A DNA stretch of 64,000 nt from IMGVR_UViG_3300021511_000003:1-64000; one strand, 5' to 3'. Shown: positions 541 through 46,720, numbered from the stretch's first letter. Notes: a model not told the origin generated them from the letters alone. Translations and numbers: made by a program.

Positions 541-575
541 TAATATATCTCCTTTAAAATAATAAGTATTTGATA

Positions 576-597
576 TTCACTTATTTATATATATAGT
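576..597 (-). promoter_or_regulatory. Motif A (ACTATATATATAAATAAGTGAA), candidate phage promoter
   Basis: Near-identical 22-mers at 7457-7478 (-) and 25071-25092 (+); all three are intergenic. Confidence 0.55.
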
Positions 598-628
598 AAA
601 ATATATATAAATGATATTGTAAATTTTT

Positions 629-1576: not shown

Positions 1577-1608
1577 ATATTATTTTAGTTCTAAACCTTC
1601 CATCAACT

Positions 1609-1622
1609 AAGAACAAAATATA
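1609..1622 (+). promoter_or_regulatory. Motif B copy (AAGAACAAAATATA)
   Basis: Matches the other motif B copies; lies ~40 nt upstream of ATG 1660. Confidence 0.5.
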
Positions 1623-1659
1623 AAGTGTGTCCACCATCGTTTTAAAGGAAACTTAAAAT

Positions 1660-7420: not shown

Positions 7421-7456
7421 ATTTTCTCCTTTTAAAAAATTAAAGTTAATTATTGT

Positions 7457-7478
7457 TTCATTTATTAATATATATAGT
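7457..7478 (-). promoter_or_regulatory. Motif A copy (ACTATATATATTAATAAATGAA)
   Basis: 20/22 identical to 576-597; upstream of the leftward accessory operon. Confidence 0.55.
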
Positions 7479-7514
7479 TATTGATTTAATTTATGAACAA
7501 TGTCCCACACAGTT

Positions 7515-7528
7515 TAGAACAAAATATA
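7515..7528 (+). promoter_or_regulatory. Motif B copy (TAGAACAAAATATA)
   Basis: Upstream of the HAD/tail tube operon. Confidence 0.5.
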
Positions 7529-7570
7529 AAATTGTTCGCCGGTACTATATAAAAATTATGGAAACTAATT

Positions 7571-15573: not shown

Positions 15574-15576
15574 TAT

Positions 15577-25024: not shown

Positions 25025-25036
25025 ACTACACTCCTT

Positions 25037-25050
25037 TATTTTTTGTTCTA
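25037..25050 (-). promoter_or_regulatory. Motif B copy (TAGAACAAAAAATA)
   Basis: Upstream of the HNH-terminase-tape measure operon. Confidence 0.5.
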
Positions 25051-25070
25051 AATTAGTATATATATCTCAA

Positions 25071-25092
25071 GTTATATATATTAATAAATGAA
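25071..25092 (+). promoter_or_regulatory. Motif A copy (GTTATATATATTAATAAATGAA)
   Basis: 20/22 identical to 7457-7478. Confidence 0.55.
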
Positions 25093-25112
25093 TATAAAGA
25101 ATGGTTTTTAAC

Positions 25113-25147
25113 ATCGGGAAAGGAGAATCGGGAAAGGAGAATCGGGA
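25113..25147 (+). repeat. 14-bp tandem repeat ATCGGGAAAGGAGA x2.5
   Basis: Read directly: 25113-25126, 25127-25140, partial 25141-25147. Confidence 0.9.
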
Positions 25148-25239
25148 TATGCAAAATGTAAAGACTAGGAAATGTTACACACAACGAAAATTAAACATTT
25201 ATTTTTTTAAACTTTGCTGACGTGATAATAATAGTGAAT

Positions 25240-25256
25240 ATAGGGCGTTGCCCTAT
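25240..25256. terminator. Hairpin ATAGGGC-GTT-GCCCTAT at the stop of the 25253-26530 gene
   Basis: 7-bp stem with AT-rich flanks. Confidence 0.5.
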
Positions 25257-26530
25257 TTCTTTTTGTTTGTTCTAATTAAGTTTACTACCGCGGTTGTTTC
25301 CCAATCTTTTTTTCTTTCGAATGAAACCTCTGAACTCCACAAGATATATTTTCCTTCAAAATCTTGATATTCTATTGTCATTGGTTTAAATTTTACACAT
25401 TCACCAACATCAATTAAATTCAATACTGGTAAATTTCTTTCTATATTTATTGAAATGCTTGATAAATCACCAACTGTTCTTGCATATCTCGAATTAAATA
25501 TTATCTCATTTTCATCAAACCCTGTATCTTCATTATAATATCTTACTCGATCTGCTGATGAATCTATATTTAATTGTGGGGGTAATCCTTGTGATGAATA
25601 AATTAATGAATAATCTTTTGCAACATCTTTCAATTCTTGTGTTATTGTTTTTGTAAGTTTGTTTTTTGGTCTTATTAAATGTTTTAATGTAGTTCCTAAC
25701 TTCGCAAATTTTGCATTACCTGAATAGTCTGTCTCAATTGCATCATATGTGTAAAATGTTTTTCCTTTCATAGCTTCTTGTAATATTTTATTTGACTCTT
25801 GTTTTTCTTGATAATTTGCTATTTGATATATTGTAAAAGTTTGATCTTTTTTAAACTTGTCGGTTAAATTTTTTATATAAACTGTATTATCATGTTGACA
25901 AAACACTCCTGGTACTCCATCAAATAAACCAAATCGTTGATCTAAATATCCATCAAATACATCCGGATCATTTCTTGTATGCTCTTTAATGATTTTATAA
26001 AATGTTGTTGGTGGAATACAAACTTGACTAATTACTTTTTTATTTTGATTTTTCTTATCATATTCTAAAGTTGCTCCAACATCACCTGCTAATTCATCTA
26101 GAATCTCGGGTATTTTTTTTCCAATAAAAACTTTATTAACAAGAGTGTTCATTGTTTTATAGGCTTCTCTTGCTACAGTGACAATTGTAAGTACAGTTCT
26201 ATCTTTATCAGGAATCTTTGACATTTTTTCTTTTTGTATAAGTTGAAAAGATGATGTGATATACATTAATTCAATATCAATTGATGGTCCTGAAACTGTA
26301 TATTCTCTATTCAAAGTAATTTGTAGTTTAATTGGTTCACCACCAAAAATATCTTCAATGATTACATCAGTCGGATCAATAAGCATAGATAAAGTTATTA
26401 CCTGATATGCACTTGATAATGACGATCCGATTACAACATTTATCATTTCATTTGAGTAATCCAGATCTTTAATTTTTACCTGGATTTCATATAGTTGTCT
26501 TGGGACAAACACTTTTTTAGTTTCTGGCAT
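25253..26530 (-). CDS. Putative baseplate hub / tail protein (gp27/gpD-like)
   Basis: Size and layout of hub proteins; C-terminal IDVGECVKF...EGKYILWSSEV; preceded by motif B. Confidence 0.5.
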   Translation of the reverse strand: MPETKKVFVPRQLYEIQVKIKDLDYSNEMINVVIGSSLSSAYQVITLSMLIDPTDVIIEDIFGGEPIKLQITLNREYTVSGPSIDIELMYITSSFQLIQKEKMSKIPDKDRTVLTIVTVAREAYKTMNTLVNKVFIGKKIPEILDELAGDVGATLEYDKKNQNKKVISQVCIPPTTFYKIIKEHTRNDPDVFDGYLDQRFGLFDGVPGVFCQHDNTVYIKNLTDKFKKDQTFTIYQIANYQEKQESNKILQEAMKGKTFYTYDAIETDYSGNAKFAKLGTTLKHLIRPKNKLTKTITQELKDVAKDYSLIYSSQGLPPQLNIDSSADRVRYYNEDTGFDENEIIFNSRYARTVGDLSSISINIERNLPVLNLIDVGECVKFKPMTIEYQDFEGKYILWSSEVSFERKKDWETTAVVNLIRTNKKK

Positions 26531-26543
26531 TACACATATCCTT

Positions 26544-26558
26544 TATTTTTTTGTTCCA
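26544..26558 (-). promoter_or_regulatory. Motif B variant (TGGAACAAAAAAATA)
   Basis: Immediately upstream of the RBS of the hub-like gene. Confidence 0.4.
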
Positions 26559-26669
26559 AAAAAAAATATATAAAAATATGAAGAATGGGATAATAATCTT
26601 AACCAGGTGACCGAACCCAATTAAGTTCCCATCCTTCACTTAACAAAAGGAGTAATCCACAATGTGGAT

Positions 26670-31006: not shown

Positions 31007-31894
31007 TTATAAATAACGTCTACCATCAAATCCGTTAATGTGACCGCCTTTCCAATTAACTGCAATTGCTTCGGAAGTGTGTATTGATTCCTCATGACTA
31101 CATTTGATAATCCAATCTATAATACCATCCAGTGAATTAATCGAAGTTGAAATTGATCGTATAGCATCTTCAACAAACATTGGATTTTCGCCAGCAATTC
31201 GAGCAATTTCTTGTTCATCAACTCTTTTAATTATAGGGTATGGTAGAGTTGGAATAACATTTTCAACAGCTTCAATAACATCTTCCAGCCAGACATATTT
31301 ATCGCTGGATGTATCAGTTTCAACTAATACATCTGCATATGATCTTTGATTATGAGGGTATCCTTTTGTTTCAAGAACGCTACATAATTCAGCAGAACAC
31401 GGACAGTATGATGCATATTGTATTGTTGCTCCCTGAAAGAATCTATAATACCAATTTTGTTGATCTATGATTACATCATCATATAATTGACCTTCAAATC
31501 TACATTTATAATAAAGCGGAAATTGATTATCAGATATGACCGACTTTCTAATTATTGGTATTCTGAAATCAAATGTCATGTATGCAGCATTGGTTCCAGG
31601 TGTTTCATTCAGTCCAATATTTTCAAGTAATTTTTCAAGTATTTCTTTTATCAATTTGCTTTTTAAAGGCAAATCCAAATATGGTTTTAATGTAAGTAGT
31701 AATCTTGACATTGAAATACCTTTAATATTAGAATCAAGTCTTGTTCTTAAAGACACATTGGCAATTGCTTCATTAAACCCGCCGTACTTAGATTCTAACT
31801 TAAATGGTACCTCCACATTTTCAACCCCAACTTGCATAATGGGCATTTTAATGTTTGGTATTGTGCATTGAATATCTGGTAAATCTTTGGACAT
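31007..31894 (-). CDS. folE2: GTP cyclohydrolase I, FolE2/MptA type
   Basis: LPDIQ, GISMSRL, YCPCS, PHNQRS, ENPMFVEDAIR, ESIH. Confidence 0.92.
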   Translation of the reverse strand: MSKDLPDIQCTIPNIKMPIMQVGVENVEVPFKLESKYGGFNEAIANVSLRTRLDSNIKGISMSRLLLTLKPYLDLPLKSKLIKEILEKLLENIGLNETPGTNAAYMTFDFRIPIIRKSVISDNQFPLYYKCRFEGQLYDDVIIDQQNWYYRFFQGATIQYASYCPCSAELCSVLETKGYPHNQRSYADVLVETDTSSDKYVWLEDVIEAVENVIPTLPYPIIKRVDEQEIARIAGENPMFVEDAIRSISTSINSLDGIIDWIIKCSHEESIHTSEAIAVNWKGGHINGFDGRRYL

Positions 31895-31963: not shown

Positions 31964-34900
31964 TCAGTTATGGTCCACTCCTATGACAGTAAGATAGGAA
32001 TTAAGTAATTTAACTGATTCTGGTGTTGTATCTATTGATTGTTTCTCATCTGTTAAAGTTGAATTGATGAAAGTACGGATGTAAGAATTTTTTAAATCAA
32101 TACAGTCAGATTTAGTAGTAAGAAACTCATGTAAATTACATGGTGCATCATGCCCAATTAAACATGCAGTTTCCATCTCACCACATCTTTGACCGCCTTT
32201 ATTTTTTCTACCACCCAATGGTTGAAGTGTTCTCCTTGCATACGCTCCAATACCTCTTGCAGCTAATTTTTCTTCTGCAATATGAACCATTCTAAAAAAG
32301 TAAATAAACCCAACTGCAACAGGATTTACTAAAGATGCTTTTGATAATGGATCATATATTGGAAATTTAAAATCGCTTTCAACGTATTCTATTGCTTTTT
32401 CAACATGTTGTAATTTACATGATTGAAAGGGTGCTTGTATGATTGTAAAATTTTTCAAAAATTCTGCATTGATTTCTTCTGGTAATTGTTCATTAAATTG
32501 GTTATAATACCAATTGTTATCTGTACAATCTATTACCTCAATAAATCCCAGTAAATATTTCTTTATTTCTTCTTGGTTAATCCCATCTTCAGACATTTTT
32601 ATAATATTTTGTTTGAGTTTATCAACAGCCATAGCCATATGTAATTCATACAACTGGCCAATATTCATTCTCGATATAATACCAAGTGGATTAATGCAAA
32701 TATCAAGATGTCTCCCATCTGGCAACTGTGGCATTTTTTCATGATCAACAATTCTGGAAATTACTCCTTTATTTCCATGTCTATTAGCCATTTTATCACC
32801 AACTTGGACTCTCCTGAAATGAACACCAAACATTTCAACATGTATCCCATTGATTCGTTCACGTTTCTTTTTATATTTCCCAACGAACGAAAATTTATCA
32901 AGACTTTTTTCTCTAATAACTTTTAAAGCATCTTCTTTCGACATAACATCCCGTAGAATTTTATGAAGAAATTTTTCTTTATCTTGTTGATCTGCAAGTT
33001 TATTTTCAACCCACTCTTTGTATTCAGGTACTTCTTCATTCCATGTATTTCCGTATATATTAACTTCGGAAATAATATAATTTTTTCGGGCTTCTAATGG
33101 TACAGTTTCAGAAAATACTGAATATTGTTCATCGGAATTTAATTTTTTCAAGATGGCATAAGGATCGCCAGATTTAATTGTTTCAAGTTCTTCAGGTAAT
33201 GGTTTATACTCACCATTTTGTAATGACAAAAGAACCTTATCTGGTGTTATTGTAAATGATAAATCTTTATAATGAACTGATGTTAAAACGTCTTCCTTTA
33301 CAAGTCTATCTGATATAACAATTCCATCCTCATAATTATTACCGTAATAAACCATAACACCAGTTAATAAATTTTTTCCAATATTAATATTACCATTATT
33401 ACAGAAATTACTTTCTGCAATAATATCCCCTGCTTTAAATTTATCTCCGCTTTTTACATATATATTCATAAAGTCCATATGTTCAACATAGATTTTTCTA
33501 TAACGGATATCAAATATATCGGTATCTTTATCATTATAAATAACAATTATATATTCTTTATCAATATGAACGACTTCCCCATCTTTCTTTGCAATTTTAA
33601 CGAATTGCGTATATGATGTGTATAACCCTTCTGACCCTGAACTGATTAGCGGAGTATCAAATTTTCTAAGCATAATTGACTGTCTCATTTGTGATGCAGC
33701 CATTTGTAGTCGAGTTTGATCATTATGCTTTAAAAATGGAGTCATTGATACCGGTATTGATATTGGATGTTTGTCACAAATTTCATCTGTGAATTTCATC
33801 TTTTCATTGATATGTACATTTGGAAGAATGTTTTGTAATACTCCACAGTTGTCTCTATCTGGTGTATCAACAGGACATAATCTACCGAACATACTTGGGC
33901 AAATATCTCTTAAATGCTTGGGAATGTTCTCCCGTTTGAAGCCTCCGGGTCCAAGAAGACTAATTCTCGATAACTTTGTTAATTCTTCAATTGGATTAAT
34001 TGAGAAATCAAATTGAACAATATCTGAAACGTTACACTCTGAAAGTATTTGAGTTGAATTAATATTAAATTTGGGTTGCCTTGCAGTTCGATTTGCAAAA
34101 CATAGATCGAATATGATTTTTGAAATTTTTGCAATGACAATATATTCAAAGCATCTGATTCTTTTATTCGTAAATAGTGTATCATCAACCGAACCAGTTT
34201 TTAATATTTCAGATATTTCTTCAAGGATTGTTGGGTATGTCATAAATTGTGCTGTAATTAAATCAACTTTTGGTATTAAATCAATTGCGTAAAGAATATC
34301 CTCACCTTTTGATTTTGCATTATACCTAGAATAAAGTCTTCCAAGTTCTAATATAAAATCGTCTATTGTGTAACCAATTGATTCATCAATGTATAATTTT
34401 AGATCTTGTCTTAATATATCAAAGAGGTTATCTCTTTCTTGTTCAATATCTATATCTAAATCATATTTTTCTGTGATACCTTCAATTCCATAATATGCAA
34501 GTAATATTAATGATAAAGGAACTTTTTTACCCATGAAGCTAATTTTAATACGTGGTCCTTCTTTGTCTTTAAATGCCATTATGGTTGCTACATTCGTACG
34601 TAGCTTTATATTTTCTCCCCTTGTTACTATGGGTATATCAAAAAGTTGTAATAAGGGAATTTTTCTTCTTCCATTGATATAAATATAATTTTTATCAACC
34701 AATTTTGGAATGAAAATACTTATATCAATTTCAGAAGATCCTTTTTGTAATTTAATAGCCAATGTTTCTTTGAGTGTTTTGGCCAATTCACCAGATGAAA
34801 ATCGTGAATCTTTTAAACTAATATCATTTATTTGAAATCCGATTTCTTCAACCGGTTTTACTATATTTTGTACAATAGGTAAAATATTTTCATAATCCAA

Positions 34901-34966
34901 TTGTCTTAAAGTGAATATATTATTTTCACTATTTTGTATTACAGCATTCGGGTTGATTATTTTCAA
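31964..34966 (-). CDS. rpoB: Multisubunit RNA polymerase beta subunit (TTG start)
   Basis: GRLCPVDTPD, RLQMAASQMRQ, YGNNYEDG, GDKMANRHGNKGVIS, NPLGIISRMNIGQ, GGQRCGEME; GGAGG RBS. Confidence 0.95.
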   Translation of the reverse strand: MKIINPNAVIQNSENNIFTLRQLDYENILPIVQNIVKPVEEIGFQINDISLKDSRFSSGELAKTLKETLAIKLQKGSSEIDISIFIPKLVDKNYIYINGRRKIPLLQLFDIPIVTRGENIKLRTNVATIMAFKDKEGPRIKISFMGKKVPLSLILLAYYGIEGITEKYDLDIDIEQERDNLFDILRQDLKLYIDESIGYTIDDFILELGRLYSRYNAKSKGEDILYAIDLIPKVDLITAQFMTYPTILEEISEILKTGSVDDTLFTNKRIRCFEYIVIAKISKIIFDLCFANRTARQPKFNINSTQILSECNVSDIVQFDFSINPIEELTKLSRISLLGPGGFKRENIPKHLRDICPSMFGRLCPVDTPDRDNCGVLQNILPNVHINEKMKFTDEICDKHPISIPVSMTPFLKHNDQTRLQMAASQMRQSIMLRKFDTPLISSGSEGLYTSYTQFVKIAKKDGEVVHIDKEYIIVIYNDKDTDIFDIRYRKIYVEHMDFMNIYVKSGDKFKAGDIIAESNFCNNGNINIGKNLLTGVMVYYGNNYEDGIVISDRLVKEDVLTSVHYKDLSFTITPDKVLLSLQNGEYKPLPEELETIKSGDPYAILKKLNSDEQYSVFSETVPLEARKNYIISEVNIYGNTWNEEVPEYKEWVENKLADQQDKEKFLHKILRDVMSKEDALKVIREKSLDKFSFVGKYKKKRERINGIHVEMFGVHFRRVQVGDKMANRHGNKGVISRIVDHEKMPQLPDGRHLDICINPLGIISRMNIGQLYELHMAMAVDKLKQNIIKMSEDGINQEEIKKYLLGFIEVIDCTDNNWYYNQFNEQLPEEINAEFLKNFTIIQAPFQSCKLQHVEKAIEYVESDFKFPIYDPLSKASLVNPVAVGFIYFFRMVHIAEEKLAARGIGAYARRTLQPLGGRKNKGGQRCGEMETACLIGHDAPCNLHEFLTTKSDCIDLKNSYIRTFINSTLTDEKQSIDTTPESVKLLNSYLTVIGVDHN

Positions 34967-35153
34967 ACTGAATCCTCCTATCTTTACAGTATACTTTCAA
35001 GTTTTCCTCCAATTTGTCATCGTCAATATAATAAGGATCCCCATGTACTAATAAAACATTCATAATAAGTTGAGTTAAACGAAGATCTGGGTTATTGTAC
35101 CAAACCTTTTTAATTAATACAAGAATTCTATCAATTCTTTTTATGTCTCTCAT
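34929..35153 (-). CDS. Small conserved phage protein (MRDIKRID...PDLRLTQL)
   Basis: Start moved to the ATG at 35153, which overlaps the upstream TGA. Confidence 0.65.
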   Translation of the reverse strand: MRDIKRIDRILVLIKKVWYNNPDLRLTQLIMNVLLVHGDPYYIDDDKLEENLKVYCKDRRIQFENNQPECCNTK

Positions 35154-35636
35154 AAAATGTATCTCCTTAGAACTATAGCTTGATACCATGCTTTATGCCA
35201 CGTTCTATTATAATTTGCTGTTGTATTACAACTATTACAAATAGTTATAAGATTTAATGGGTTACAATCTTTTTTATTATAATTGATATGATGAACAACT
35301 AAATTTGAAGGATTTATTAAATAATTACATACAGGATTTAAACATCTATAACCATCGCGATATTTTATATATTCTTTGTAGATGATTTTTATATGTTCCT
35401 GAAATGAATTTGTAACCATACATGTTTAATGTTTTTTTAATATTATGAATACTTTTCTTTTTTTTTACCTGAGCATTTTAAACATCTTCGACCATTTCTA
35501 AAATTATTTTAAATGAATGATTATTATCACATACCCAGATTAAAGGATCATATCTTGTTTTGTATTCTTTTGATATACAAACATAAGAAAATTGCTTAGC
35601 ATATTCTTTTATGAATTGTATGGTTACTTTTTTCAT
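35150..35636 (-). pseudogene. Frameshifted HNH homing endonuclease remnant between rpoC and rpoB
   Basis: Successive frames give MKKVT...WVCDNNHSF, then NFRNGRRCLKCSGK, then GYKFISGTYKN, then YRDGYRC...VHHINYNKKDC...ICNSC; first stop at 35478-35480. Confidence 0.75.
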
Positions 35637-38348
35637 CTATATAATTTTTTCTCCCTTTAGTATTTTATCCATAACACCAGAATATCTTCCTTCATATAGA
35701 ATTCCTTGTAGAATTGCTCTTTTGGGATTTGAGAACGCCATTGCCAAAATCCAACTTTCTTGGTTGGGTACAGTTTGAATACTATAATACTTTGGAGATA
35801 CTTTTTCACGATTTTCTATCAATCTCCATTTTTTATTATCTCTCCACATTAACTGAGCAACTACAGATTCAAAATGAACATTATGAATATCTTTACCATA
35901 TGCATCAAATAATTCATCAACTATCATGGTATATGTTTTATTTTCGAATTTATGTAATAATTTAGAAACAGATGCAAGATCTCCAATAATATCCTTTTGC
36001 TTCATAGATGTATCATCATCCCCTATTTCTTCACCTTTGATGACTGCTGATCCAGAAGTATGAAATGTACGAAGAACTAATTGAGTTCCTCTCTCACCCA
36101 ATGTTTGAGCTGCTATAATTCCAATAAATCGACTATTAAGAATTTTATATAAATCACCATAACACTTTTTACATATTTTAGGTGATTTACATAATATTGG
36201 GCTTCGTATAAAAATAATTTTTCCGATTATATTTTTATAATTATCTTCTGTGATTTTATATAGGGTTTTATCTTCTTCATTAAGAGCCCATCTGTTAATT
36301 AACATTCGAGCTTTTCTATTATTTTTTACATCAACTTCCAATAAATCTGTTGTACCACAATCGTCAAGATCTTTATCAATCTGTAAATTGGCACATGTAA
36401 AAATAAGTTTTCTTGAAAGATAACCTGATGTTCCTGTATTTAATGCAACGTCCAACAAACCTTTTCTACAACCATATGTTGAATAGAAAAATTCTTTTTG
36501 TGTAAGCCCATCAACTAGAGAATTTTTGATTGGATGGGGTAAAATTTCTCCATCGAAGTTTGAAATAAACCCTCTGGATAAAATTAATTGTTTAACTTGT
36601 CCCCAACTTCCTCTTGCACCTGATTCTATCATATATGAATATTTGAATTTTTCTTTTAACTCATCAATCAAACTTGGATCCGAAAATGCAGTTAATTGAT
36701 TTCTTATACTGCTATGTGAAAAAATATCATGTCTTATTTTCTTTGCTCCTACAATAGGAAAATCTTTTAGTGACATCGTTGTACCATAAAGAGTTGCAAA
36801 TTTAAACCCGGTCTTTTTAATATTATCAAGAATTACAATTGTTTCTTCTTGTGGGTATTTATTTTTAATATCATTCAGGATTCGAAGTAAACCTTTTTCT
36901 GAAATCTTTTTATCGACAACTGGATAATCTTTTGGTAATTGTCTATTAAATTCAGCTCGACCGATTAATAATTTATGTTCTTTATATGTAATTATTTTTT
37001 TTGAAAATTCCTCAGATGTTAAATAATATATTCCCAGAATAATATCTTGACTCGGTGTTGTTGTTAAGTACTCATTAGATGGACTACTTAGATTCGATGT
37101 TATTACAATCTTTTCTTTAATTTCATTTTTGGCGTCATCTGAAATGGGTATATATACAGCCATTTGATCCCCATCAAAATCTGCATTAAATGGAGGACAT
37201 GCGAGCGGATGTATTTTAATAACTGAATCTAATGTAATCTTAATTTTAAAACCTAACATTCCAAGTTTGTGAAGCGAAGGTTGTCTATTTAATATACAGT
37301 ATTCATTTTTTGTTACGTCTTTACAAATTTTTAATAAGACAGGTGTTTTATTTTCAATACATTCGTTTACATAATCAATTGATTTATTGAGTAATTTGAA
37401 TTTACCAAGTTGGATGATTCTTTTTGCTATAGGAAGTTTAAATATTTCAAGTACCATTATATATGGTAACTTACACTCATCCAATGAAAGAGTTGGATCA
37501 GGGGAAATAACTGCACGACCGGAGAAGTCAATTCTTTTTCCAAGAATATTCCCTCGTATCAACCCCTCTTTTTTAGCCATCTTTTCAAGAATTCTTGTAT
37601 AAAGTTCGCTAACGTCTTTTTGTAATTGTTTAAAATATGTATAATAGAGAGCCTTATCACGTTGAATATCAATAATTGTGTCTCTCATAATTTCTTTTTT
37701 AGTTAGTATTTGAACATAATAACGATTGATTTTATCCATTAACTGTTTTGTTTCGCCTGAACTTTTTGATGTTGGTCGTAACTCAGGTGGTAATACAATA
37801 ATCTGATTTATCAATAAATTACTTAGATTATCTTTAATAATTTGCCATTCTGGTGGGTTATCTGGGTTTTCAGCAACAGCTCTGACCAACTCTTCAATTG
37901 CTTCCACTCGTTCCCACTTTTCTGCACCTACTGGTATTTGATCTTCACTTATTGTAACTACATATTCATCTAAAGCTGAGTCTAAATAAAGAATACTTTT
38001 ATCATTTTTCATAAGATCATCGATTGCTTTTTTTAAGCCTTTACCGCCCAAATTAACAATTAGATCATAAAATAATGGATTAACCACAGATATCGGTATT
38101 ACAATTTTTGCGAATGTTTTTCTTCTGGAATCACTATTTATAATAGGAACACCACAAATATCACACACACTACCGGATTTCGATACACCATGATAAATGC
38201 CACATTGGCATGTATAATTTCTCACTGGCCCAAATATTTGTTCAGAGAATAAGCCTTCTGGGTTAAACTTTTTCTTTCCGAATGTTTTTAGAGACGTTAC
38301 TTCGTCTAAGTTTTCACAGAAATCACTATAATTTAAAATCTTAGGCAT
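35637..38348 (-). CDS. rpoC: Multisubunit RNA polymerase beta-prime subunit
   Basis: GLFSEQIFGP...CQCG...CDICG, ILGKRIDFSGRAVI, NRQPSLH, FNADFDGDQM, SGARGS, TSGYLSRKL, QTLGERGTQLVLRTFH. Confidence 0.97.
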   Translation of the reverse strand: MPKILNYSDFCENLDEVTSLKTFGKKKFNPEGLFSEQIFGPVRNYTCQCGIYHGVSKSGSVCDICGVPIINSDSRRKTFAKIVIPISVVNPLFYDLIVNLGGKGLKKAIDDLMKNDKSILYLDSALDEYVVTISEDQIPVGAEKWERVEAIEELVRAVAENPDNPPEWQIIKDNLSNLLINQIIVLPPELRPTSKSSGETKQLMDKINRYYVQILTKKEIMRDTIIDIQRDKALYYTYFKQLQKDVSELYTRILEKMAKKEGLIRGNILGKRIDFSGRAVISPDPTLSLDECKLPYIMVLEIFKLPIAKRIIQLGKFKLLNKSIDYVNECIENKTPVLLKICKDVTKNEYCILNRQPSLHKLGMLGFKIKITLDSVIKIHPLACPPFNADFDGDQMAVYIPISDDAKNEIKEKIVITSNLSSPSNEYLTTTPSQDIILGIYYLTSEEFSKKIITYKEHKLLIGRAEFNRQLPKDYPVVDKKISEKGLLRILNDIKNKYPQEETIVILDNIKKTGFKFATLYGTTMSLKDFPIVGAKKIRHDIFSHSSIRNQLTAFSDPSLIDELKEKFKYSYMIESGARGSWGQVKQLILSRGFISNFDGEILPHPIKNSLVDGLTQKEFFYSTYGCRKGLLDVALNTGTSGYLSRKLIFTCANLQIDKDLDDCGTTDLLEVDVKNNRKARMLINRWALNEEDKTLYKITEDNYKNIIGKIIFIRSPILCKSPKICKKCYGDLYKILNSRFIGIIAAQTLGERGTQLVLRTFHTSGSAVIKGEEIGDDDTSMKQKDIIGDLASVSKLLHKFENKTYTMIVDELFDAYGKDIHNVHFESVVAQLMWRDNKKWRLIENREKVSPKYYSIQTVPNQESWILAMAFSNPKRAILQGILYEGRYSGVMDKILKGEKII

Positions 38349-38350: not shown

Positions 38351-38575
38351 TTATTCTCCTATATTTATATTTTCAATTATGAATTGCCCTATTGCAAGAA
38401 AATGACTTTTTATTTTTTGAGCAATTATTCGATCTAAATCAGGCATAATTTCATGAGCTATAATTTTTATATCATCTACTGACAATTCAATCTTTGAATC
38501 TTTTATAGCTTTGTCAACTATGCGGGTGATTTCCTTTTCTAATAGTGATGGTTGTTCGATATTAATCTTTTTCAT
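38351..38575 (-). CDS. Small hypothetical protein abutting the rpoC start
   Basis: ORF track; overlapped by the upstream gene. Confidence 0.6.
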   Translation of the reverse strand: MKKINIEQPSLLEKEITRIVDKAIKDSKIELSVDDIKIIAHEIMPDLDRIIAQKIKSHFLAIGQFIIENINIGE

Positions 38576-38780
38576 TTTTTTTAGATTCCTTTTTATCGAT
38601 CTTGATTTTTATCTTATCAACTCCTTTGTCAACTATTTCATCTGCTGTATCAGCAGTACGTTCAACCATCAGTTTAATTAATGATCTTATTGATTTTTTA
38701 CCTGTTGTTGCAATATCATCAATAATAATTTTAATCTGTTTTTTCACTTCTTTATTAGTTAATTTTTTTTTATTTTCCAT
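38562..38780 (-). CDS. Small basic hypothetical protein
   Basis: ORF track; GGAG RBS inside the upstream gene. Confidence 0.55.
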   Translation of the reverse strand: MENKKKLTNKEVKKQIKIIIDDIATTGKKSIRSLIKLMVERTADTADEIVDKGVDKIKIKIDKKESKKNEKD

Positions 38781-39127
38781 GCTCCTAACACCTCTTGTTT
38801 TTTATATTGTATTTCATCCCAAGGTGTAAAGTAACAGTCATCTAAATTAAAGCATAATAACATATTAGTAATCATATTTTTAGACTTGTTCGTTAAATTA
38901 TATTTTCGTAAACTATGTGGTATACAAAACTCTCCACTTTTTGGTATTGCATTTGGGTGTGGATTATCTAATATAACCATATCAATTTTACCATTAACAG
39001 TTTTAACAATAAAACCATCAACTTCAAATTTATTTGCTAGTTTCGTAATTGTATATATTTCATTTTTATATATTAATTTCCTTGGTTTGATAAATTCGGT
39101 TATTTCATGATTTTTTATTATCATCAT
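38759..39127 (-). CDS. Small putative E2/UBC-like protein
   Basis: HPNAIPKSGEFCIP resembles the E2 signature HPN-x(7)-C with one extra residue; coupled to the upstream ThiF gene by ATGA overlap. Confidence 0.5.
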   Translation of the reverse strand: MMIIKNHEITEFIKPRKLIYKNEIYTITKLANKFEVDGFIVKTVNGKIDMVILDNPHPNAIPKSGEFCIPHSLRKYNLTNKSKNMITNMLLCFNLDDCYFTPWDEIQYKKQEVLGAWKIKKN

Positions 39128-39984
39128 GCAGCTCCGGTTTCAGGAATTAACTCGACATAAACATTACTGTTTTCATTGTATAGTGATATTACAAAATTAT
39201 TAAAATCTGTCTGACAAGATACTAAAGACATAAATAATGTAATTAAATCTTTACCATTTTTCAAAGAGTTCATTGGAATCACTTTTTCAGAAACAGGAAA
39301 CATTCTACTTCCAAGAAATACAGTAACATCTTTATCTTTGTTTATATCCATTATTGGGACAATTTTATCTGGCAAATTTAAAAATTTTTCATTCCCCAGA
39401 ATGTTTTCATATACTATATCATAATTTTTATTATCAATATGCTTGACATAATCGAGTTCATATTTTTGAATAGATTTACTTTTTATAAGAGTTGTAATTA
39501 TATCACAATGAATCAACATAGAAATAATTGAAGCAGCATACCTCAAATCATTTCTTGATAATTCTAAAATATATTTTCCAGCCTGTAAGCAAGAGTATGT
39601 AACATTTTTTCTAAAGTCACCCATTAAATATCTTGATGATATGTAAAATCTTGCATCAATCTCTTTTTGTCGATCATAGGTATAATCTCTACAATCAATT
39701 ACTAAATCCTCTTTTATAAGTTTTGTTTTACCTTCCTTATATTTACTTTGAAATGCACATATTTCAAGATCAGGATTTTGATCATGTAGAATATCTTTTA
39801 GAGCTTCGACTTTTGGGGCACCTATATCGACTTGTCGGTAAATCGAATTCTTCAAATTCTTTTTCTCAACTATATCGTGGTCTAATATAACTATCTTCTC
39901 AATTCCTTCCAAATTAGCTATAGCTTCTGCTACAAATCCACCGAGTGTTCCTAACCCAATTATTACTATATTTTTATACACCAC
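39124..39984 (-). CDS. Divergent ThiF/E1-like protein with C-terminal extension
   Basis: IIGLGTLGG, DHDIVEKKNL, GAPKVEAL, IDCRD; lacks the canonical NxxRQ arginine; ends VELIPETGAA. Confidence 0.8.
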   Translation of the reverse strand: MVYKNIVIIGLGTLGGFVAEAIANLEGIEKIVILDHDIVEKKNLKNSIYRQVDIGAPKVEALKDILHDQNPDLEICAFQSKYKEGKTKLIKEDLVIDCRDYTYDRQKEIDARFYISSRYLMGDFRKNVTYSCLQAGKYILELSRNDLRYAASIISMLIHCDIITTLIKSKSIQKYELDYVKHIDNKNYDIVYENILGNEKFLNLPDKIVPIMDINKDKDVTVFLGSRMFPVSEKVIPMNSLKNGKDLITLFMSLVSCQTDFNNFVISLYNENSNVYVELIPETGAA

Positions 39985-40013
39985 GGGTCATAGTCTCCTT
40001 TACTGATATTGTG

Positions 40014-40032
40014 GGGGGATACAATATCCCCC
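40014..40032 (-). terminator. GC hairpin GGGGGATA-CAA-TATCCCCC (plus-strand sequence)
   Basis: 8-bp stem between 40052-40618 and the second ThiF gene; U tract weak. Confidence 0.5.
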
Positions 40033-40051
40033 TCATTATAAAAACTGATAT

Positions 40052-40618
40052 TTATAGTTGAGCTTCCTCCATCGGTTCAGTGAAAATATCTAGTTCTTTA
40101 AGCATTTGTTGTTCTTCAGTACCAACCGGAACTGGTCGATAATGTGATTTATACTTAAAGAAATTATTTGCCAATTTAATGGGATAGCTTAAGGGGATAT
40201 TATATGAATATTTCTTTATTTTACCACTTTTCAAAATATTAACTGGTAATGTCGGATCTATTCGTGATAATTCTCCAGCAATTTCACTCCTGAAATGAAG
40301 GTCACCTTTTGCATCTTTTACTTTAAAAGATCGGTTAATAACTTTATCATCTCGGGATGAACCGTTGATTTTCATTTTATTTTCTTTTCTGATCAATGCT
40401 TTCATAGCGCGACCAAATGCTATATTTTTTCCTTTTACTTTTGAAAATGTATCGCGTAGAGAGCATATTGCAACTCCTCTTGATTCAATACGTTTTAACT
40501 TTGAATTGATAAAAACACAAGCTGTGAAAACATTATTCGCAATAGCACTTCCTGCAACATAAAATGCTACTTTATCAACTCTATTGTTGTTCAATATCTT
40601 TTGTGTTTCAGGATTCAT
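40052..40618 (-). CDS. Conserved phage hypothetical protein
   Basis: GVAICSLRDTFSKVKGKNIAFGRA, a CSxxDxF-x-KxxG-xx-IA pattern I recognise from other phage proteins. Confidence 0.7.
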   Translation of the reverse strand: MNPETQKILNNNRVDKVAFYVAGSAIANNVFTACVFINSKLKRIESRGVAICSLRDTFSKVKGKNIAFGRAMKALIRKENKMKINGSSRDDKVINRSFKVKDAKGDLHFRSEIAGELSRIDPTLPVNILKSGKIKKYSYNIPLSYPIKLANNFFKYKSHYRPVPVGTEEQQMLKELDIFTEPMEEAQL

Positions 40619-40642
40619 ATCATATTCCTTTGTTATTGGTTA

Positions 40643-40660
40643 GGGGGCCCGAAGACCCCC
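40643..40660 (-). other. Stable RNA hairpin GGGGGUC-UUCG-GGCCCCC downstream of the Ubl gene
   Basis: C(UUCG)G tetraloop on the mRNA strand; no U tract follows. Confidence 0.7.
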
Positions 40661-40674
40661 ATTTCTAATGATAT

Positions 40675-41145
40675 TTAACCTTTCTTCCCTGCTGGTTTCA
40701 GGAATTCCAGATTGTCGCCGGAGTTTAGAACATACTCCGCATCGACTTCTTTGCCATTAACCAGTCCTGTAGAAAGACGATCAACATTCAGAACTTCACG
40801 AAGGAAGTCACCAACTTCTTTTACGCTCTTACCGGCAACTGGGAAATTACCAGAAGATGCTCCACAAGATACATGAATGGTTGTGGTGGCACGGGAACCG
40901 AAAGGGGCATCGGGTTTAGTAATTGTACTTTGACCGGTAAACTGAATACCGGTAAGTTTTTCCATTGCCTTTTCGGGAGCTTTGCTAATTGTTGAACCAC
41001 CGCCATAACGAGCGAGAATTGCATTGATAACGGTATTTTTATTTTTTTTGGAAACCCCCGGGATATTCAATTCATCAATACACATTCTTTTAAGGGCTTT
41101 GGATGTTTTGGCTTCAAGTTCTTCTCTTTTGAAAATTCTTCCCAT
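40675..41145 (-). CDS. Ubiquitin-like (beta-grasp) modifier with N-terminal HeH/Rho-N-like domain
   Basis: C-terminal ~70 aa IHVSCG...VAGKSVKEV...LVNGKEV...VLNSGDNLEFLKPAGKKG-COOH; N-terminal LEAKTSKALKRMC...IPGVSKKNKNTVINAIL. Confidence 0.8.
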   Translation of the reverse strand: MGRIFKREELEAKTSKALKRMCIDELNIPGVSKKNKNTVINAILARYGGGSTISKAPEKAMEKLTGIQFTGQSTITKPDAPFGSRATTTIHVSCGASSGNFPVAGKSVKEVGDFLREVLNVDRLSTGLVNGKEVDAEYVLNSGDNLEFLKPAGKKG

Positions 41146-41161
41146 TGTAAAATCTCCTTTG

Positions 41162-41848
41162 TTAATGTTTCACGATTCGAATTTTTGCATCTGCAGTCAT
41201 TTTTGTTAAATCAAAATAAACTTCAGATCGTTCATACTCGTCTTTGACTACAACGTTGTAGAAAGACCAACACATCAAAGTTGCAACCCCCAGATTTGCA
41301 AAGTATAGTTGGGGGTCAGAATGAGCAAGCTCATCACAACTCATTTCTTCTGGTAATTTATCATCTGGCTCTGCTATTTCTGGATGATATGCACATAGAT
41401 CAGGAGTTAAGTCTTTTCCATCTCTTCTAATATAAATCTGCACATTACCATCTGTATAGTCATTGCCACCAGAAATTAAAATAACATTTTGTAAATTTTT
41501 ACAGTAATTGGATACAATCATTCTGGTTTTGTGATTATCAACACATAGAAATACAATATAGTCTTCTTTAATAACTTCTTCTACAGTTTTTTCATTTACA
41601 AAAGCTTCGAATGCATTAAACTCTAGTCCATCAAATTTCATTTCAAGTTCGGTAGCTTTTATATCAGCTTTATTTCCGATACGAAAAAACTCTTGTCGTT
41701 CATAATTTTTTTGTTCATACTCGTCTCCATCCACCAATAGTAATTCTGCATCAAGATCTTTTGAATAGTTTAAAAATCTACATAATCTCTCAACTAATAT
41801 AGAACCAACTCCACCAAGTCCAATAACTGATATAAACATGTCAGACAT
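41162..41848 (-). CDS. ThiF/E1 family activating enzyme
   Basis: VIGLGGVG, DGDEYEQKNYERQ, LCVDNHKTR, SGGND...GNVQ, MSC (candidate catalytic Cys), QLYFAN. Confidence 0.92.
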   Translation of the reverse strand: MSDMFISVIGLGGVGSILVERLCRFLNYSKDLDAELLLVDGDEYEQKNYERQEFFRIGNKADIKATELEMKFDGLEFNAFEAFVNEKTVEEVIKEDYIVFLCVDNHKTRMIVSNYCKNLQNVILISGGNDYTDGNVQIYIRRDGKDLTPDLCAYHPEIAEPDDKLPEEMSCDELAHSDPQLYFANLGVATLMCWSFYNVVVKDEYERSEVYFDLTKMTADAKIRIVKH

Positions 41849-43386
41849 TATAAAACCTCTCTTTTAAATACTTTTTTAAACATAGCCATGAGACCATTTG
41901 GTTGTTCTGATATTGGTATTATGGTTGATCCTGGTTCCGGTATTCTTTGAATAGGTTCATCCTCCTTTTTAGCAGCTTGAGTTATCTCATCTACTTCTCG
42001 TGTTAAAAGCACTCCTTTATTTGTATATGGTTGTTCAGGTTTTTCTATACTATTAATTGGAGTGTAACAGAAAGGACAAGTTTCATCACTATTGTTTAAG
42101 TGAAAGCCATTACCACATTCTTTACATTTAATATATGAAGATTCTTCAATTTCTTTTGTAGAATCTTTTTTAAACATGTGGTCATATTCATCGCCTGGTA
42201 TATATTGATCTGACAGAACTTCCTCTTTATCTAATAGAATAAGATGTTCATTTGTATTACATGTGGAACATTGGAGTTCGAATCCTTCTTCCTCTTTAAC
42301 AATCTCGCCACAATTTTTACAAAAATACATCTCTTCAAAATCATCTTCCTCAATCTCAGAAGTAAGTTTGCAAAGTCTATGAGTGCATGTGGCACATGGT
42401 ACAAAGTCACCATCCTGAGTATGTGGAGGGAACTTTAAAGGTGTTGGTATCACTGGTTTAATACCTGGCTTGGAAGCACGTGAATTAATATTTTTTCCAT
42501 TTTGCTTCCAAATAGAACGATCATAATTAAAACCCCAACCATCATTATATGCATGAGCAGCATATCCATACCATCCAGCGTATCCATTACGATAACTTGG
42601 GAAGGTGTAAACACCCTTTTCTACCATACTCATCCAGTTTTTATTGAAAATACGATCCTCATCTGAGCATACTATATCATATCTACGATCAAATTTTTTA
42701 CGCTCGAATGGATATTTGGGCTTGACATCTACATCTTCAATAAGTTTTCCATTTTTCCATTTATAAACTGTTTTAACTGATTTATTATCAATGGAATTAG
42801 TTTCAGACATACACACTATATTATCAATATATTTTTCAGGTTCTATCATTTGTCGAAACCCGTTTGATACAATTGATGAAGAAAGGCTGGGATATTTATC
42901 ACCTAAATCTCCAAATGTCAGATGAAGTCCATCAAAATGTTCTTCATCACTATCATCAACTCCTGAATGAAACGCTGACATGTTTCCATGACTATGAATA
43001 GTTCCAATCATTGTATATCCATCAATAGTCAAACCTTTATCATAATCACAGCTAGCACCTGCGACTTTTTGATGTGGCGGAACAATTTTATGTTCTCCCG
43101 TTTGTTCATTATAGAACAATAGAACGATTGCTTCTGATCTGTTATATGTATCATATACTTCTCGAAAAAAGCTTATAACTTTTGCAATATATTTTCCAGG
43201 AATCTTTGTAATATGCATTCGTGCACTTGATGCCACACTTTCAAGAATTGAGATATTTTTAACCGGTGCAATACTTTCCATTACACCAAGTTTCTTTTTA
43301 AGAAATACTCCCTCCTTACCAATAATATAATAAATATCATCTTTAGGCATTTCATTTTGCCCATCATTCAGGACTACTTTAAACAT
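41848..43386 (-). CDS. JAB/MPN metalloprotease with C-terminal zinc ribbons
   Basis: SEAIVLL, GTIHSHGNMSAFHSGVDDSDE; CATC, CKNC...CSTC, CKEC...CPFC. Confidence 0.9.
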   Translation of the reverse strand: MFKVVLNDGQNEMPKDDIYYIIGKEGVFLKKKLGVMESIAPVKNISILESVASSARMHITKIPGKYIAKVISFFREVYDTYNRSEAIVLLFYNEQTGEHKIVPPHQKVAGASCDYDKGLTIDGYTMIGTIHSHGNMSAFHSGVDDSDEEHFDGLHLTFGDLGDKYPSLSSSIVSNGFRQMIEPEKYIDNIVCMSETNSIDNKSVKTVYKWKNGKLIEDVDVKPKYPFERKKFDRRYDIVCSDEDRIFNKNWMSMVEKGVYTFPSYRNGYAGWYGYAAHAYNDGWGFNYDRSIWKQNGKNINSRASKPGIKPVIPTPLKFPPHTQDGDFVPCATCTHRLCKLTSEIEEDDFEEMYFCKNCGEIVKEEEGFELQCSTCNTNEHLILLDKEEVLSDQYIPGDEYDHMFKKDSTKEIEESSYIKCKECGNGFHLNNSDETCPFCYTPINSIEKPEQPYTNKGVLLTREVDEITQAAKKEDEPIQRIPEPGSTIIPISEQPNGLMAMFKKVFKREVL

Positions 43387-45958: not shown

Positions 45959-45963
45959 AACAT

Positions 45964-46344
45964 TTATTCACCTCGTAGAAATTTATATCGTTTGGCATAT
46001 TCAGTTAATATCATTTCAGGTCTATTATCATTGATTGACCATACTCTTTGCCTCTTTATTGAGAGAGTTTTTGATTCTCTAAAAATATATTCTTTTCTAG
46101 ATGTTACAAATAATACAGCTAACCAAACATCTTCACTTTCACGTTCTAATGAAAGAAAAGCAATTTCATTTGTTATTCTTCCAGGAACTTCCAGTGTAAG
46201 AAATAGATTTGGTCCCTTTGGAATTATTTCAGTATGTATAATATTTTCTTCTTCTTCTTCAGAAATCATATCACATAATTGTCTTATTTCATCAATATTA
46301 TTATCACCTTTGATTTCTGAAAGTAATTTATTTAAAATTCCCAT
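45964..46344 (-). CDS. Hypothetical protein
   Basis: ORF track; AGGAG RBS. Confidence 0.65.
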   Translation of the reverse strand: MGILNKLLSEIKGDNNIDEIRQLCDMISEEEEENIIHTEIIPKGPNLFLTLEVPGRITNEIAFLSLERESEDVWLAVLFVTSRKEYIFRESKTLSIKRQRVWSINDNRPEMILTEYAKRYKFLRGE

Positions 46345-46366
46345 TTAGTATCTCCTTTATTAAGAT

Positions 46367-46717: not shown

Positions 46718-46720
46718 AAT

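What the first reader, a model, noticed from the sequence alone, without database searches (positions are those of the whole stretch)
31964..38348. Compact, unsplit two-subunit multisubunit RNA polymerase in a T4-like-tailed phage
Seen: beta (1000 aa, TTG start) and beta-prime (903 aa, intact NADFDGD) in the order rpoC then rpoB. Both are much shorter than bacterial subunits, and no alpha, omega or sigma is recognisable in the window. Established: phiKZ/AR9-type phage RNAPs have beta and beta-prime split into several genes, whereas a separate group of tailed phages with deep-branching unsplit subunits has been described. Inference: this phage belongs to the latter type, and its assembly and specificity factors may be among the unknown neighbours (38351-38780, 15577-16695).
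Basis: partly seen in the sequence, partly recalled or inferred. Interest (0 to 1): 0.6.

Follow-up and report, generated by a model that had tools for sequence, protein, structure and literature searches.

The report
One of two unsplit phage RNA polymerases
The two genes are a real, intact phage RNA polymerase core of an already described uncultured lineage, but the phage has a second such pair just outside the window, and the two pairs look like undivided versions of the virion and non-virion polymerases of phiKZ/AR9-type giant phages.

Summary
Window 35637-38348(-) encodes a 903-aa beta-prime with intact NADFDGD, and 31964-34966(-) a 1000-aa beta with a TTG start behind an AGGAGG site.

The window is the first 64 kb of a 223-kb jumbo myovirus contig from marine and vent sediments.

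- A second unsplit pair (beta-prime 1006 aa, beta 1358 aa) lies at 67.6-74.8 kb. It is present in all five long relatives tested, including a complete 277-kb genome.
- The window pair scores best on phiKZ/AR9 non-virion profiles and the second pair on virion profiles. A concatenated tree test favours this pairing (RELL 0.93; alternatives AU 0.10 and 0.06, not rejected).
- The genome carries two over-represented intergenic motifs that closely resemble AR9's early and late promoters. It shares about 40 genes with AR9. No alpha, omega or sigma was found.

The proposed neighbouring "factors" are not supported. The conserved upstream genes look like a ubiquitin-like conjugation module (E1, E2-like, JAB).

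The enzyme is a new member of a known kind. The link to phiKZ/AR9 polymerases is the interesting part.

The parts
35637..38348 (-). beta-prime-like subunit of polymerase pair 1 (903 aa). It keeps NADFDGD, both zinc-site cysteine clusters, the bridge helix and the trigger loop.
   Evidence: Translation. Pfam Rpb1 domains 2, 3 and 5 above cut-off, weaker 1 and 4. PHROG profiles of the non-virion beta-prime C and N pieces score 140 and 112 bits, against 82 and 76 bits for the virion pieces. Found in 80 of 80 relatives.
31964..34966 (-). beta-like subunit of pair 1 (1000 aa, TTG start with AGGAGG 7 nt upstream). It has no N-terminal extension.
   Evidence: Translation. Pfam Rpb2 domains 3, 6, 7. 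PHROG non-virion beta-C profile 131 bits. Follows beta-prime in 80 of 80 relatives.
35150..35419 (-). Remnant of an HNH homing endonuclease inserted between the two subunit genes.
   Evidence: Pfam HNH_3 1.3e-4 and PHROG HNH families down to 1e-7. Present in 1 of 80 relatives. In G002 the gap is only about 225 nt.
34929..35189 (-). Small ORF (86 aa, DUF1040-like) between beta-prime and beta. Function unknown.
   Evidence: Pfam DUF1040 8.9e-4, below cut-off. Homologue in 35 of 80 relatives, usually shorter.
38351..38575 (-). 74-aa ORF directly upstream of beta-prime. Patchy among relatives, function unknown.
   Evidence: Present in 38 of 80 relatives, no family match.
7449..7480 (-). Motif A site (CTATATATATTAAT-N3-4-TGAA), a candidate early promoter like AR9's AAATATATATTAT-6N-G.
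   Evidence: Position-matrix score 31.9 bits, intergenic. The extended pattern occurs 12 times in the genome against 1.2 in shuffles. AR9 consensus.
25069..25100 (+). Motif A site, pointing away from the annotated genes.
   Evidence: 29.2 bits, intergenic.
568..599 (-). Weaker motif A site.
   Evidence: 22.1 bits, intergenic.
1603..1632 (+). Motif B site (TTAGAACAAAAnATAAA; AACA-5N-TA), a candidate late promoter ahead of the tail-sheath genes. It resembles AR9's late consensus AACA-6N-TA/G.
   Evidence: 24.5 bits, 57 nt before the gene at 1660. The core pattern occurs 13 times against 0.9 in shuffles, and 11 against 0.9 in G002.
7509..7538 (+). Motif B site ahead of the tail/baseplate operon (7571-16695).
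   Evidence: 29.9 bits. Baseplate wedge match.
25027..25056 (-). Motif B site ahead of gene 24086-25024 and the large terminase.
   Evidence: 28.9 bits. Terminase match.
26535..26564 (-). Motif B site ahead of gene 25253-26530. It is the last A or B site on this strand before 66.7 kb.
   Evidence: 22.2 bits. Relatives have a B site at the matching place 11-12 kb downstream of the beta-prime start (31 sites).

Best explanation
The two genes encode the catalytic core (beta-prime plus beta, each a single polypeptide) of one of two multisubunit RNA polymerases of an uncultured jumbo myovirus of the mReC lineage. The phage lives in marine and hydrothermal sediments.

Shown:
- Both genes are intact and conserved.
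- A second unsplit pair lies at contig positions 67573-71649 (beta, 1358 aa, with a roughly 347-aa N-terminal extension) and 71818-74838 (beta-prime, 1006 aa).
- All five long relatives tested keep both pairs.
- No alpha, omega or sigma is encoded.

Inferred:
- The window pair is the counterpart of the non-virion polymerase of phiKZ/AR9-type phages. The second pair is the counterpart of their virion polymerase.
- By analogy with AR9, the second enzyme would be packaged and injected, and would start early transcription at motif A sites.
- The window enzyme would be made in the cell and would transcribe late (virion) genes from motif B sites. It would need a specificity subunit that has not been identified.

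Confidence by step: real phage polymerase core of the mReC kind, about 0.95. Two-polymerase system related to AR9/phiKZ, about 0.85. Window pair is the non-virion counterpart, about 0.65. Motif B is its promoter, about 0.45.
For: - Domains and motifs are intact.
- Second pair present; both pairs in G001-G005.
- 296 IMG/VR stretches (the best 80 kept as loci) encode relatives of the window beta-prime.
- Profile scores run in opposite directions. The window beta-prime scores 140 and 112 bits on the non-virion profiles against 82 and 76 on the virion ones. The second beta-prime scores 144 and 85 bits on the virion profiles against 79 on the non-virion N profile, with no listed hit on the non-virion C profile. 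The profiles were assigned using phiKZ and AR9 genes.
- phiKZ's only match to the second beta-prime is gp180, the virion subunit. The window beta-prime matches gp55 and gp74, the non-virion subunits.
- FastTree on 873 columns gives window pair + non-virion 0.88 and second pair + virion 0.85.
- Concatenated beta-prime plus beta (1361 columns): this arrangement is best by 16.4 and 17.7 lnL units, RELL 0.93.
- A long N-terminal extension of beta occurs only in the second pair and in the virion enzymes.
- Motifs A and B match the AR9 early and late consensus with a spacer one base shorter. B lies ahead of the capsid, sheath, tail and terminase-side genes.
- About 40 AR9 ORFs have homologues, including the head protein, portal-like protein, sheath, protease and DNA polymerase.
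- No alpha, omega or sigma.
Against: - The tree signal is weak. With beta-prime alone the three arrangements differ by 5-7 lnL units (AU 0.77, 0.32, 0.17).
- The site-heterogeneous quick tree leaves the four clades unresolved (window pair + non-virion 71).
- In the concatenated test the alternatives are not rejected at 0.05 (AU 0.10 and 0.06). The sub-topologies there were fixed from the beta-prime trees.
- phiKZ and AR9 rows are very long branches.
- The N-terminal extensions share no detectable sequence.
- No gp68/gp226 homologue was found, but the profile used cannot find phiKZ's own gp68.
- The window pair has no A or B motif on its strand between 26.6 and 66.7 kb. Motif A is almost absent within 10 kb of it in 64 relatives, and motif B lies upstream in only about 5. 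Its time of expression is therefore unknown.
- The second pair is preceded only by a B-like variant with a different spacer.
- There is no expression or virion protein data. No RNA run holds the sequence.
Confidence: 0.65

Rival explanations
1. The two pairs arose by a duplication inside the mReC lineage, independent of the virion/non-virion duplication in phiKZ/AR9 phages. The two-polymerase resemblance would then be convergent, and roles cannot be transferred.
For: Not rejected: AU 0.32 with beta-prime alone and 0.10 concatenated. The site-heterogeneous quick tree leaves the four clades unresolved.
Against: It is 16.4 lnL units worse in the concatenated test, RELL 0.05. Profile scores differ by 30-60 bits in opposite directions. 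The beta N-terminal extension is shared only by the second pair and the virion enzymes. AR9-like early and late motifs are present.
Confidence: 0.2
2. The roles are swapped: the window pair is the packaged enzyme and the second pair works inside the cell.
For: The arrangement window pair + virion is not formally rejected (AU 0.17 and 0.06). The window pair sits in a block that lacks the late-type motif.
Against: It is the worst of the three arrangements. Profile scores point the other way. The window pair lies among replication and nucleotide genes, whereas the second pair follows a terminator hairpin and a B-like motif.
Confidence: 0.08
3. The genes are a recent capture from a bacterium, or the contig joins phage and host DNA by misassembly.
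For: By sequence alone, solved bacterial beta-primes are the strongest PDB matches (328 bits).
Against: The best prokaryotic matches are 27-33% identical (best segment; one short-segment hit 36%) and spread over Actinomycetota, Planctomycetota, WOR-3, Aquificota and others. Bacteria and phage enzymes separate in trees (99 and 1.0). The same gene order occurs in 80 independent contigs and in a complete genome with terminal repeats. G+C is even, 0.265-0.35 across the window and close to 0.30 over most of it. The order is beta-prime then beta, and there is no alpha, omega or sigma.
Confidence: 0.02
4. One of the two pairs is a decaying, non-functional copy.
For: A homing-endonuclease remnant sits between the window genes. 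In relative G004 the second beta-prime is cut in two.
Against: All four proteins are full length with intact catalytic motifs. Both pairs are kept at 53-61% identity in distant relatives without stops.
Confidence: 0.03

Closest known systems
mReC polymerases (multimeric RNAP-encoding Caudovirales; Weinheimer & Aylward 2020, PMC7481178)
   Same: Unsplit beta and beta-prime above 800 aa with NADxDGD, branching apart from cellular enzymes. Gp23-family capsid. Relatives G002 and G005 of this phage are rows in that paper's tables, which list an 'a' set (about 1365/1002 aa) and a 'b' set (about 1000/900 aa) for some contigs.
   Different: The main text does not discuss two sets per genome. According to Sokolova et al. 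2020, phiKZ-type enzymes were left out of its trees. The window pair is the 'b' type.
AR9 (PBS1-like) non-virion RNA polymerase: two beta-prime pieces, two beta pieces, plus gp226
   Same: Best profile matches of the window pair. No alpha, omega or sigma. AR9's late promoter AACA-6N-TA/G resembles motif B. About 40 shared phage genes.
   Different: AR9's subunits are split into four polypeptides, with introns and homing endonucleases. Here there are two polypeptides. No gp226 homologue was found (inconclusive). Nothing here shows whether the DNA holds uracil, as AR9's does.
phiKZ non-virion and virion RNA polymerases (Chimalliviridae)
   Same: Two paralogous enzymes per genome. gp55 and gp74 match the window beta-prime, and gp180 matches the second one.
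   Different: Only 8-9 phiKZ ORFs have blastp homologues. No nuclear-shell protein was detected, though the search also finds none in AR9. The subunits here are unsplit.
Bacterial RNA polymerase core (rpoB/rpoC)
   Same: All catalytic elements are present. Pairwise scores are higher than to phiKZ/AR9 pieces because those evolve fast.
   Different: 300-500 residues shorter. Gene order reversed. No alpha, omega or sigma. 27-33% identity with no phylum preferred.
Polymerase-like genes of cultured phages YerA41, Rhizobium RHph_TM30 and Vibrio Va2
   Same: Closest cultured-phage matches, at 24-28% identity. They join the same phage clade.
   Different: They branch outside the group formed by the two pairs plus the phiKZ/AR9 enzymes. 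YerA41's beta-prime is split in two. No beta was detected in TM30 or Va2 with these queries.

Membership tests
mReC (Weinheimer & Aylward 2020) | Both beta and beta-prime on one contig, each at least 800 aa, complete, with NADxDGD in beta-prime | tested here: met
   1000 aa and 903 aa, NADFDGD present. Criteria read.
mReC (Weinheimer & Aylward 2020) | The polymerase branches apart from cellular homologues | tested here: met
   Phage clade against bacteria: 1.0 (FastTree) and 99 (IQ-TREE quick). Nearest bacterial proteins 27-33% identical (one short-segment hit 36%), from many phyla. No archaea or eukaryotes were included.
mReC (Weinheimer & Aylward 2020) | Tailed-phage hallmark genes; capsid protein of Pfam PF07068 | tested here: met
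   Sheath, baseplate wedge and large terminase. Capsid protein at contig 199110-200561 hits PF07068 at 6.9e-34.
mReC (Weinheimer & Aylward 2020) | Close kinship to contigs in the published set | tested here: met
   G002 and G005 are listed in the supplement. G002 shares 61% (pair 1) and 53-55% (pair 2) identity with this contig, and 131 ORFs at a mean of 46%.
phiKZ/AR9-type two-polymerase jumbo phages | Two paralogous multisubunit polymerases in one genome | tested here: met
phiKZ/AR9-type two-polymerase jumbo phages | beta and beta-prime each divided into two or more polypeptides | tested here: not met
   All four proteins are single open frames. The one exception is relative G004, whose second beta-prime is 780 + 239 aa.
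phiKZ/AR9-type two-polymerase jumbo phages | No alpha, omega or sigma encoded | tested here: met
   with positive controls.
phiKZ/AR9-type two-polymerase jumbo phages | Fifth non-virion subunit (phiKZ gp68 / AR9 gp226) | tested here: inconclusive
   phrog_25005 finds nothing here, and nothing in phiKZ either. No blastp hit.
phiKZ/AR9-type two-polymerase jumbo phages | AT-rich early promoter and a distinct late promoter | tested here: met
   Motif A (12 against 1.2 expected) and motif B (13 against 0.9) resemble the AR9 consensus sequences. This rests on sequence only; no transcript ends are known.
phiKZ/AR9-type two-polymerase jumbo phages | One enzyme packaged in the virion | not testable with these tools
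   Needs virion proteomics.
Chimalliviridae (nucleus-forming phages) | Nuclear shell protein (chimallin) | tested here: inconclusive
   phrog_4795 finds none in G000-G003, none in AR9 and none in the controls.
Bacterial RNA polymerase acquired from a host | Nests inside a bacterial phylum; rpoB-rpoC order; alpha, omega and sigma partners | tested here: not met

The most novel reading that the evidence does not exclude
The 'a' and 'b' polymerase sets of mReC phages are the undivided orthologues of the virion and non-virion polymerases of phiKZ/AR9-type jumbo phages. If so, the duplication came before the split of these lineages, the unsplit state is ancestral, and the fragmentation seen in phiKZ and AR9 is derived. 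Relative G004 would show a split in progress, caused by inserted genes. This bears on two published positions: that the origin of the two enzymes cannot be traced (Sokolova et al. 2020), and that the split state is primordial (Iyer et al. 2021). It would also offer two-polypeptide versions of both enzymes for biochemistry.
Probability: 0.55. Interest if true: 0.65.

Novelty: new member of a known kind. Interest (0 to 1): 0.5.

Why it matters
The enzyme type is already published, so on its own the finding is a further member of mReC.

What adds value is the context. This lineage keeps both a virion-like and a non-virion-like polymerase as plain two-gene cores, alongside AR9-like promoter motifs.

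That makes three open questions directly testable:
- whether the two jumbo-phage polymerases come from one old duplication;
- whether gene splitting is derived;
- how such cores assemble and find promoters without alpha, omega or sigma.

As of the 2020 review, no virion polymerase of a jumbo phage had been purified. Two-polypeptide forms should be far easier to express than four- or five-piece enzymes.

Tried and rejected
- Megablast of the locus against cultured phages found no match.
- Chimallin profile phrog_4795 was blank here, in AR9 and in all controls, so it says nothing.
- AR9 gp226 profile phrog_25005 was blank, but it also misses phiKZ gp68.
- The N-terminal extension of the second beta, searched as a profile, found nothing in AR9 or phiKZ.
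- The C-terminal parts of both beta-primes show no similarity to AR9 gp119, annotated 'RNA polymerase'.
- The 155-aa ORF upstream of the second beta-prime shows no similarity to AR9's sigma-like gp148, which sits in a similar position.
- Full IQ-TREE runs with bootstraps, the 'careful' treekit search and treekit's AU test did not finish in the time allowed. The '-fast' constrained searches were not converged and were discarded.
- Motif scans around the window pair in 64 relatives found no consistent A or B site upstream, so its expression class stays open.
- Complex prediction was not used. The only candidates are neighbours with no other reason to bind. The beta subunit alone is 1000 residues, which fills the size limit. 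The conserved upstream neighbours turned out to be a ubiquitin-like module.
- Read laying was not used. No RNA run holds the sequence.
- The big protein searches were not used. Word, family and locus searches settled the identity.

Full report
**The observation.**
- Window 31964-34966 gives a 1000-aa protein with Pfam Rpb2 domains 3, 6 and 7, and the beta signatures GDKMANRHGNKGV and GGQRCGEME.
- Window 35637-38348 gives a 903-aa protein with Rpb1 domains, NADFDGD, both cysteine clusters, the bridge helix and the trigger loop.
- The TTG start of beta is the first start codon in a frame that is open for only ten more codons. AGGAGG lies 7 nt upstream (sequence), and relatives align from residue 1.
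- beta-prime precedes beta in all 80 related loci.
- The 670-nt gap between the genes holds an HNH-endonuclease remnant seen in only 1 of 80 relatives, and a small DUF1040-like ORF seen in 35 of 80.

**The genome.**
- The window is the first 64 kb of a 223,015-bp IMG/VR virus contig, estimated 71% complete.
- The window carries a contractile sheath, a gp6-like baseplate wedge, a virion protein, the large terminase, SbcCD-like nuclease, both topoisomerase II subunits and a helicase.
- G+C runs from 0.265 to 0.35 and is close to 0.30 over most of the window.
- The capsid protein, further along the contig, belongs to Pfam Gp23.
- The sequence occurs in marine-sediment and hydrothermal-vent metagenomes from eight studies. 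No RNA run holds it.
- It is therefore a phage, not a host contig.

**A second polymerase.**
- Searching the whole contig with the two proteins found a second pair just beyond the window. Its beta-prime is 1006 aa (71818-74838, NADFDGD intact, 32% identical to the first). Its beta is 1358 aa (67573-71649). Both lie on the minus strand in the same order.
- All five long relatives tested carry both beta-primes. One of them, G002, is a complete 277,131-bp genome with terminal repeats.
- 296 IMG/VR stretches (the best 80 kept as loci) encode relatives of the window beta-prime.

**Is it known?**
- Weinheimer & Aylward 2020 described 97 metagenomic contigs of tailed phages with unsplit, deep-branching beta and beta-prime, and named them mReC.
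- Their supplementary tables list G002 (3300001782 WOR52_10000459) and G005. For several contigs they list two sets: 'a' at about 1365/1002 aa and 'b' at about 1000/900 aa.
- The main text never discusses two sets per genome.
- The 2020 review by Sokolova et al. says those authors left phiKZ-type enzymes out of their trees, and that the origin of the virion and non-virion enzymes cannot be traced.
- Iyer et al. 2021 argue that the split state is primordial.
- A 2026 review of jumbo phages does not mention unsplit two-polymerase phages.
- The window's enzyme is therefore a member of a published lineage. Its relation to phiKZ/AR9 enzymes has not been worked out in the papers I could search.

**Relation to phiKZ and AR9.**
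- I assigned PHROG profiles using phiKZ and AR9 genes. The virion profiles are 2986 (beta-prime N piece), 2962 (beta-prime C piece) and 3148 (beta N piece). The non-virion profiles are 2987, 3015, 2943 and 3295.
- The window beta-prime scores 112 and 140 bits on the non-virion profiles, against 76 and 82 on the virion ones. The second beta-prime scores 144 and 85 bits on the virion profiles, against 79 on 2987 and no listed hit on 3015.
- The betas follow the same direction more weakly.
- In phiKZ the second beta-prime matches only gp180 (virion). The window one matches gp55 and gp74 (non-virion).
- The second beta has a roughly 347-aa N-terminal extension. The virion beta-N subunits of AR9 (about 385 aa) and phiKZ (over 500 aa) also have one. 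The non-virion betas and the window beta have none. The extensions share no detectable sequence.

**Trees.**
- FastTree on 873 beta-prime columns puts the window clade with the non-virion enzymes (0.88) and the second clade with the virion enzymes (0.85). All phage enzymes separate from bacteria (1.0).
- An IQ-TREE quick tree under a site-heterogeneous model keeps the four clades together (81) but does not resolve them (window + non-virion 71). YerA41 and TM30 + Va2 fall outside, and bacteria are separate (99).
- Constrained likelihoods on beta-prime alone differ by only 5-7 units (AU 0.77, 0.32, 0.17).
- On 1361 concatenated beta-prime and beta columns the orthology arrangement is best by 16.4 and 17.7 units (RELL 0.93). 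The alternatives stand at AU 0.10 and 0.06.
- The pairing is favoured but not proven. phiKZ and AR9 are very long branches, and the sub-topologies in the last test were fixed.

**Kinship of the phage.** About 40 AR9 ORFs have blastp homologues on this contig. They include the major head protein, a portal-like protein, the sheath, the head protease, primase, UvsX-like recombinase, the helicase next to AR9's polymerase genes, and the DNA polymerase. phiKZ shares only 8.

**Promoter-like motifs.**
- Two motifs are strongly over-represented between genes.
- Motif A is CTATATATATTAAT-N3-4-TGAA. It occurs 12 times against 1.2 in shuffles, and 14 intergenic sites score 20 bits or more.
- Motif B is TTAGAACAAAAnATAAA. 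It occurs 13 times against 0.9, and 11 against 0.9 in G002.
- AR9's mapped early consensus is AAATATATATTAT-6N-G and its late consensus is AACA-6N-TA/G (annotated sites extracted). Motifs A and B match these with a spacer one base shorter.
- Motif B lies 14-90 nt ahead of the capsid, sheath, tail-operon and terminase-side genes.
- The second pair's operon follows a strong hairpin with a T-run and a B-like variant.
- The window pair lies in a 40-kb minus-strand block (26.6-66.7 kb) with no A or B site. In 64 relatives motif A is nearly absent within 10 kb, and motif B lies upstream in only about five. When the window pair is expressed is therefore unresolved.

**Partners.**
- No alpha, omega or sigma-70 region 2 is encoded in this contig or in the complete relative. 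Controls were positive.
- The conserved 122-aa ORF at 38759-39127 folds with pLDDT 92.8. Its structural matches are almost all E2 ubiquitin-conjugating enzymes, and they are weak: Foldseek E 0.2-1, and VIA Z 4.2-5.0 over about 90 residues at 3.5-4.1 Å. It keeps an invariant HPN...C motif.
- Upstream of it lie two ThiF/E1-family genes, a protein whose C-terminus gives weak beta-grasp matches and ends in ...GKKG, and a JAB-domain protein.
- This looks like a ubiquitin-like conjugation module, not a set of polymerase factors.
- 15577-16695 ends the baseplate operon. It matches only AR9 gp052, a hypothetical protein.

**Not a capture.** The nearest prokaryotic beta-primes are 27-33% identical (best segment; one short-segment hit 36%) and come from many phyla. 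Solved bacterial enzymes score higher than phiKZ/AR9 pieces only because the latter evolve fast.

**Verdict.** The lineage assignment is right and already published. The contrast with phiKZ/AR9 and the proposed factor genes are not supported. The most useful new point is that this lineage appears to hold undivided versions of both jumbo-phage polymerases, together with AR9-like promoter motifs.

Noticed in passing
window 38759-43386 (minus strand): A conserved ubiquitin-like conjugation module lies directly upstream of the polymerase genes. It comprises a JAB-domain protein (41848-43386), ThiF/E1 (41162-41848 and 39124-39984), a 156-aa protein with a Rho_N-like N-terminus and a weak beta-grasp-like C-terminus ending ...GKKG (40675-41145), and a 122-aa E2-like protein with invariant HPN...C (38759-39127). 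These are present in 63-76 of 80 relatives. A phage-borne system of the Bil/Bub kind would be worth a study of its own.
   Followed up: partly
window 31007-31894 and 46721-47767: A GTP cyclohydrolase FolE2 gene follows beta directly (75 of 80 relatives), and a radical-SAM gene with a weak QueE-like match lies nearby. Together they hint at a 7-deazaguanine-type nucleotide or DNA modification pathway. No QueC, QueD or DpdA was identified.
   Followed up: partly
L095 (relative G004, contig 41938-47271), positions 84-3828: In this relative the second beta-prime is two separate ORFs (780 + 239 aa), with two small genes inserted between them: 128 aa Gly/Ala- and Lys-rich, and 90 aa zinc-finger-like. 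The break lies just after the trigger-loop helix, close to where AR9's virion beta-prime C piece ends. It is a natural example of a subunit being split by an insertion.
   Followed up: partly
contig 180653-183877 (outside the window; locus L273/L274): A single 1074-aa DNA polymerase ORF is the best match of both halves of AR9's split family-B polymerase (gp131 and gp151). Undivided genes in this lineage are therefore not limited to the RNA polymerases.
   Followed up: no
window 39985-40051 and 40619-40674: Two G+C-rich hairpins (GGGGGATATTGTATCCCCCC and GGGGGTCTTCGGGCCCCC), each preceded by ATATCA, lie between genes of the module upstream of the polymerase. They could be terminators, processing sites or part of a third promoter class.
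   Followed up: no
contig 71650-71817 and 74839-74980 (locus L007 7650-7817, 10839-10980): The short gaps on either side of the second beta-prime gene read as cysteine-rich peptides that share ...ECSTG(K/N)L.... They may be small zinc-finger ORFs or remnants of mobile elements.
   Followed up: no
window 25025-25252: One intergenic region holds a motif B site facing left (towards the terminase side) and a strong motif A site facing right, where no gene is annotated on that strand. This could mean antisense or divergent early transcription.
   Followed up: no
L189 (CALHLF010000040.1, 'uncultured bacterium' bin): The best-scoring 'bacterial' hit has an unusually short beta (1077 aa) on a 24.9-kb contig. 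In the tree it groups with bacteria, but its binning was not checked.
   Followed up: no
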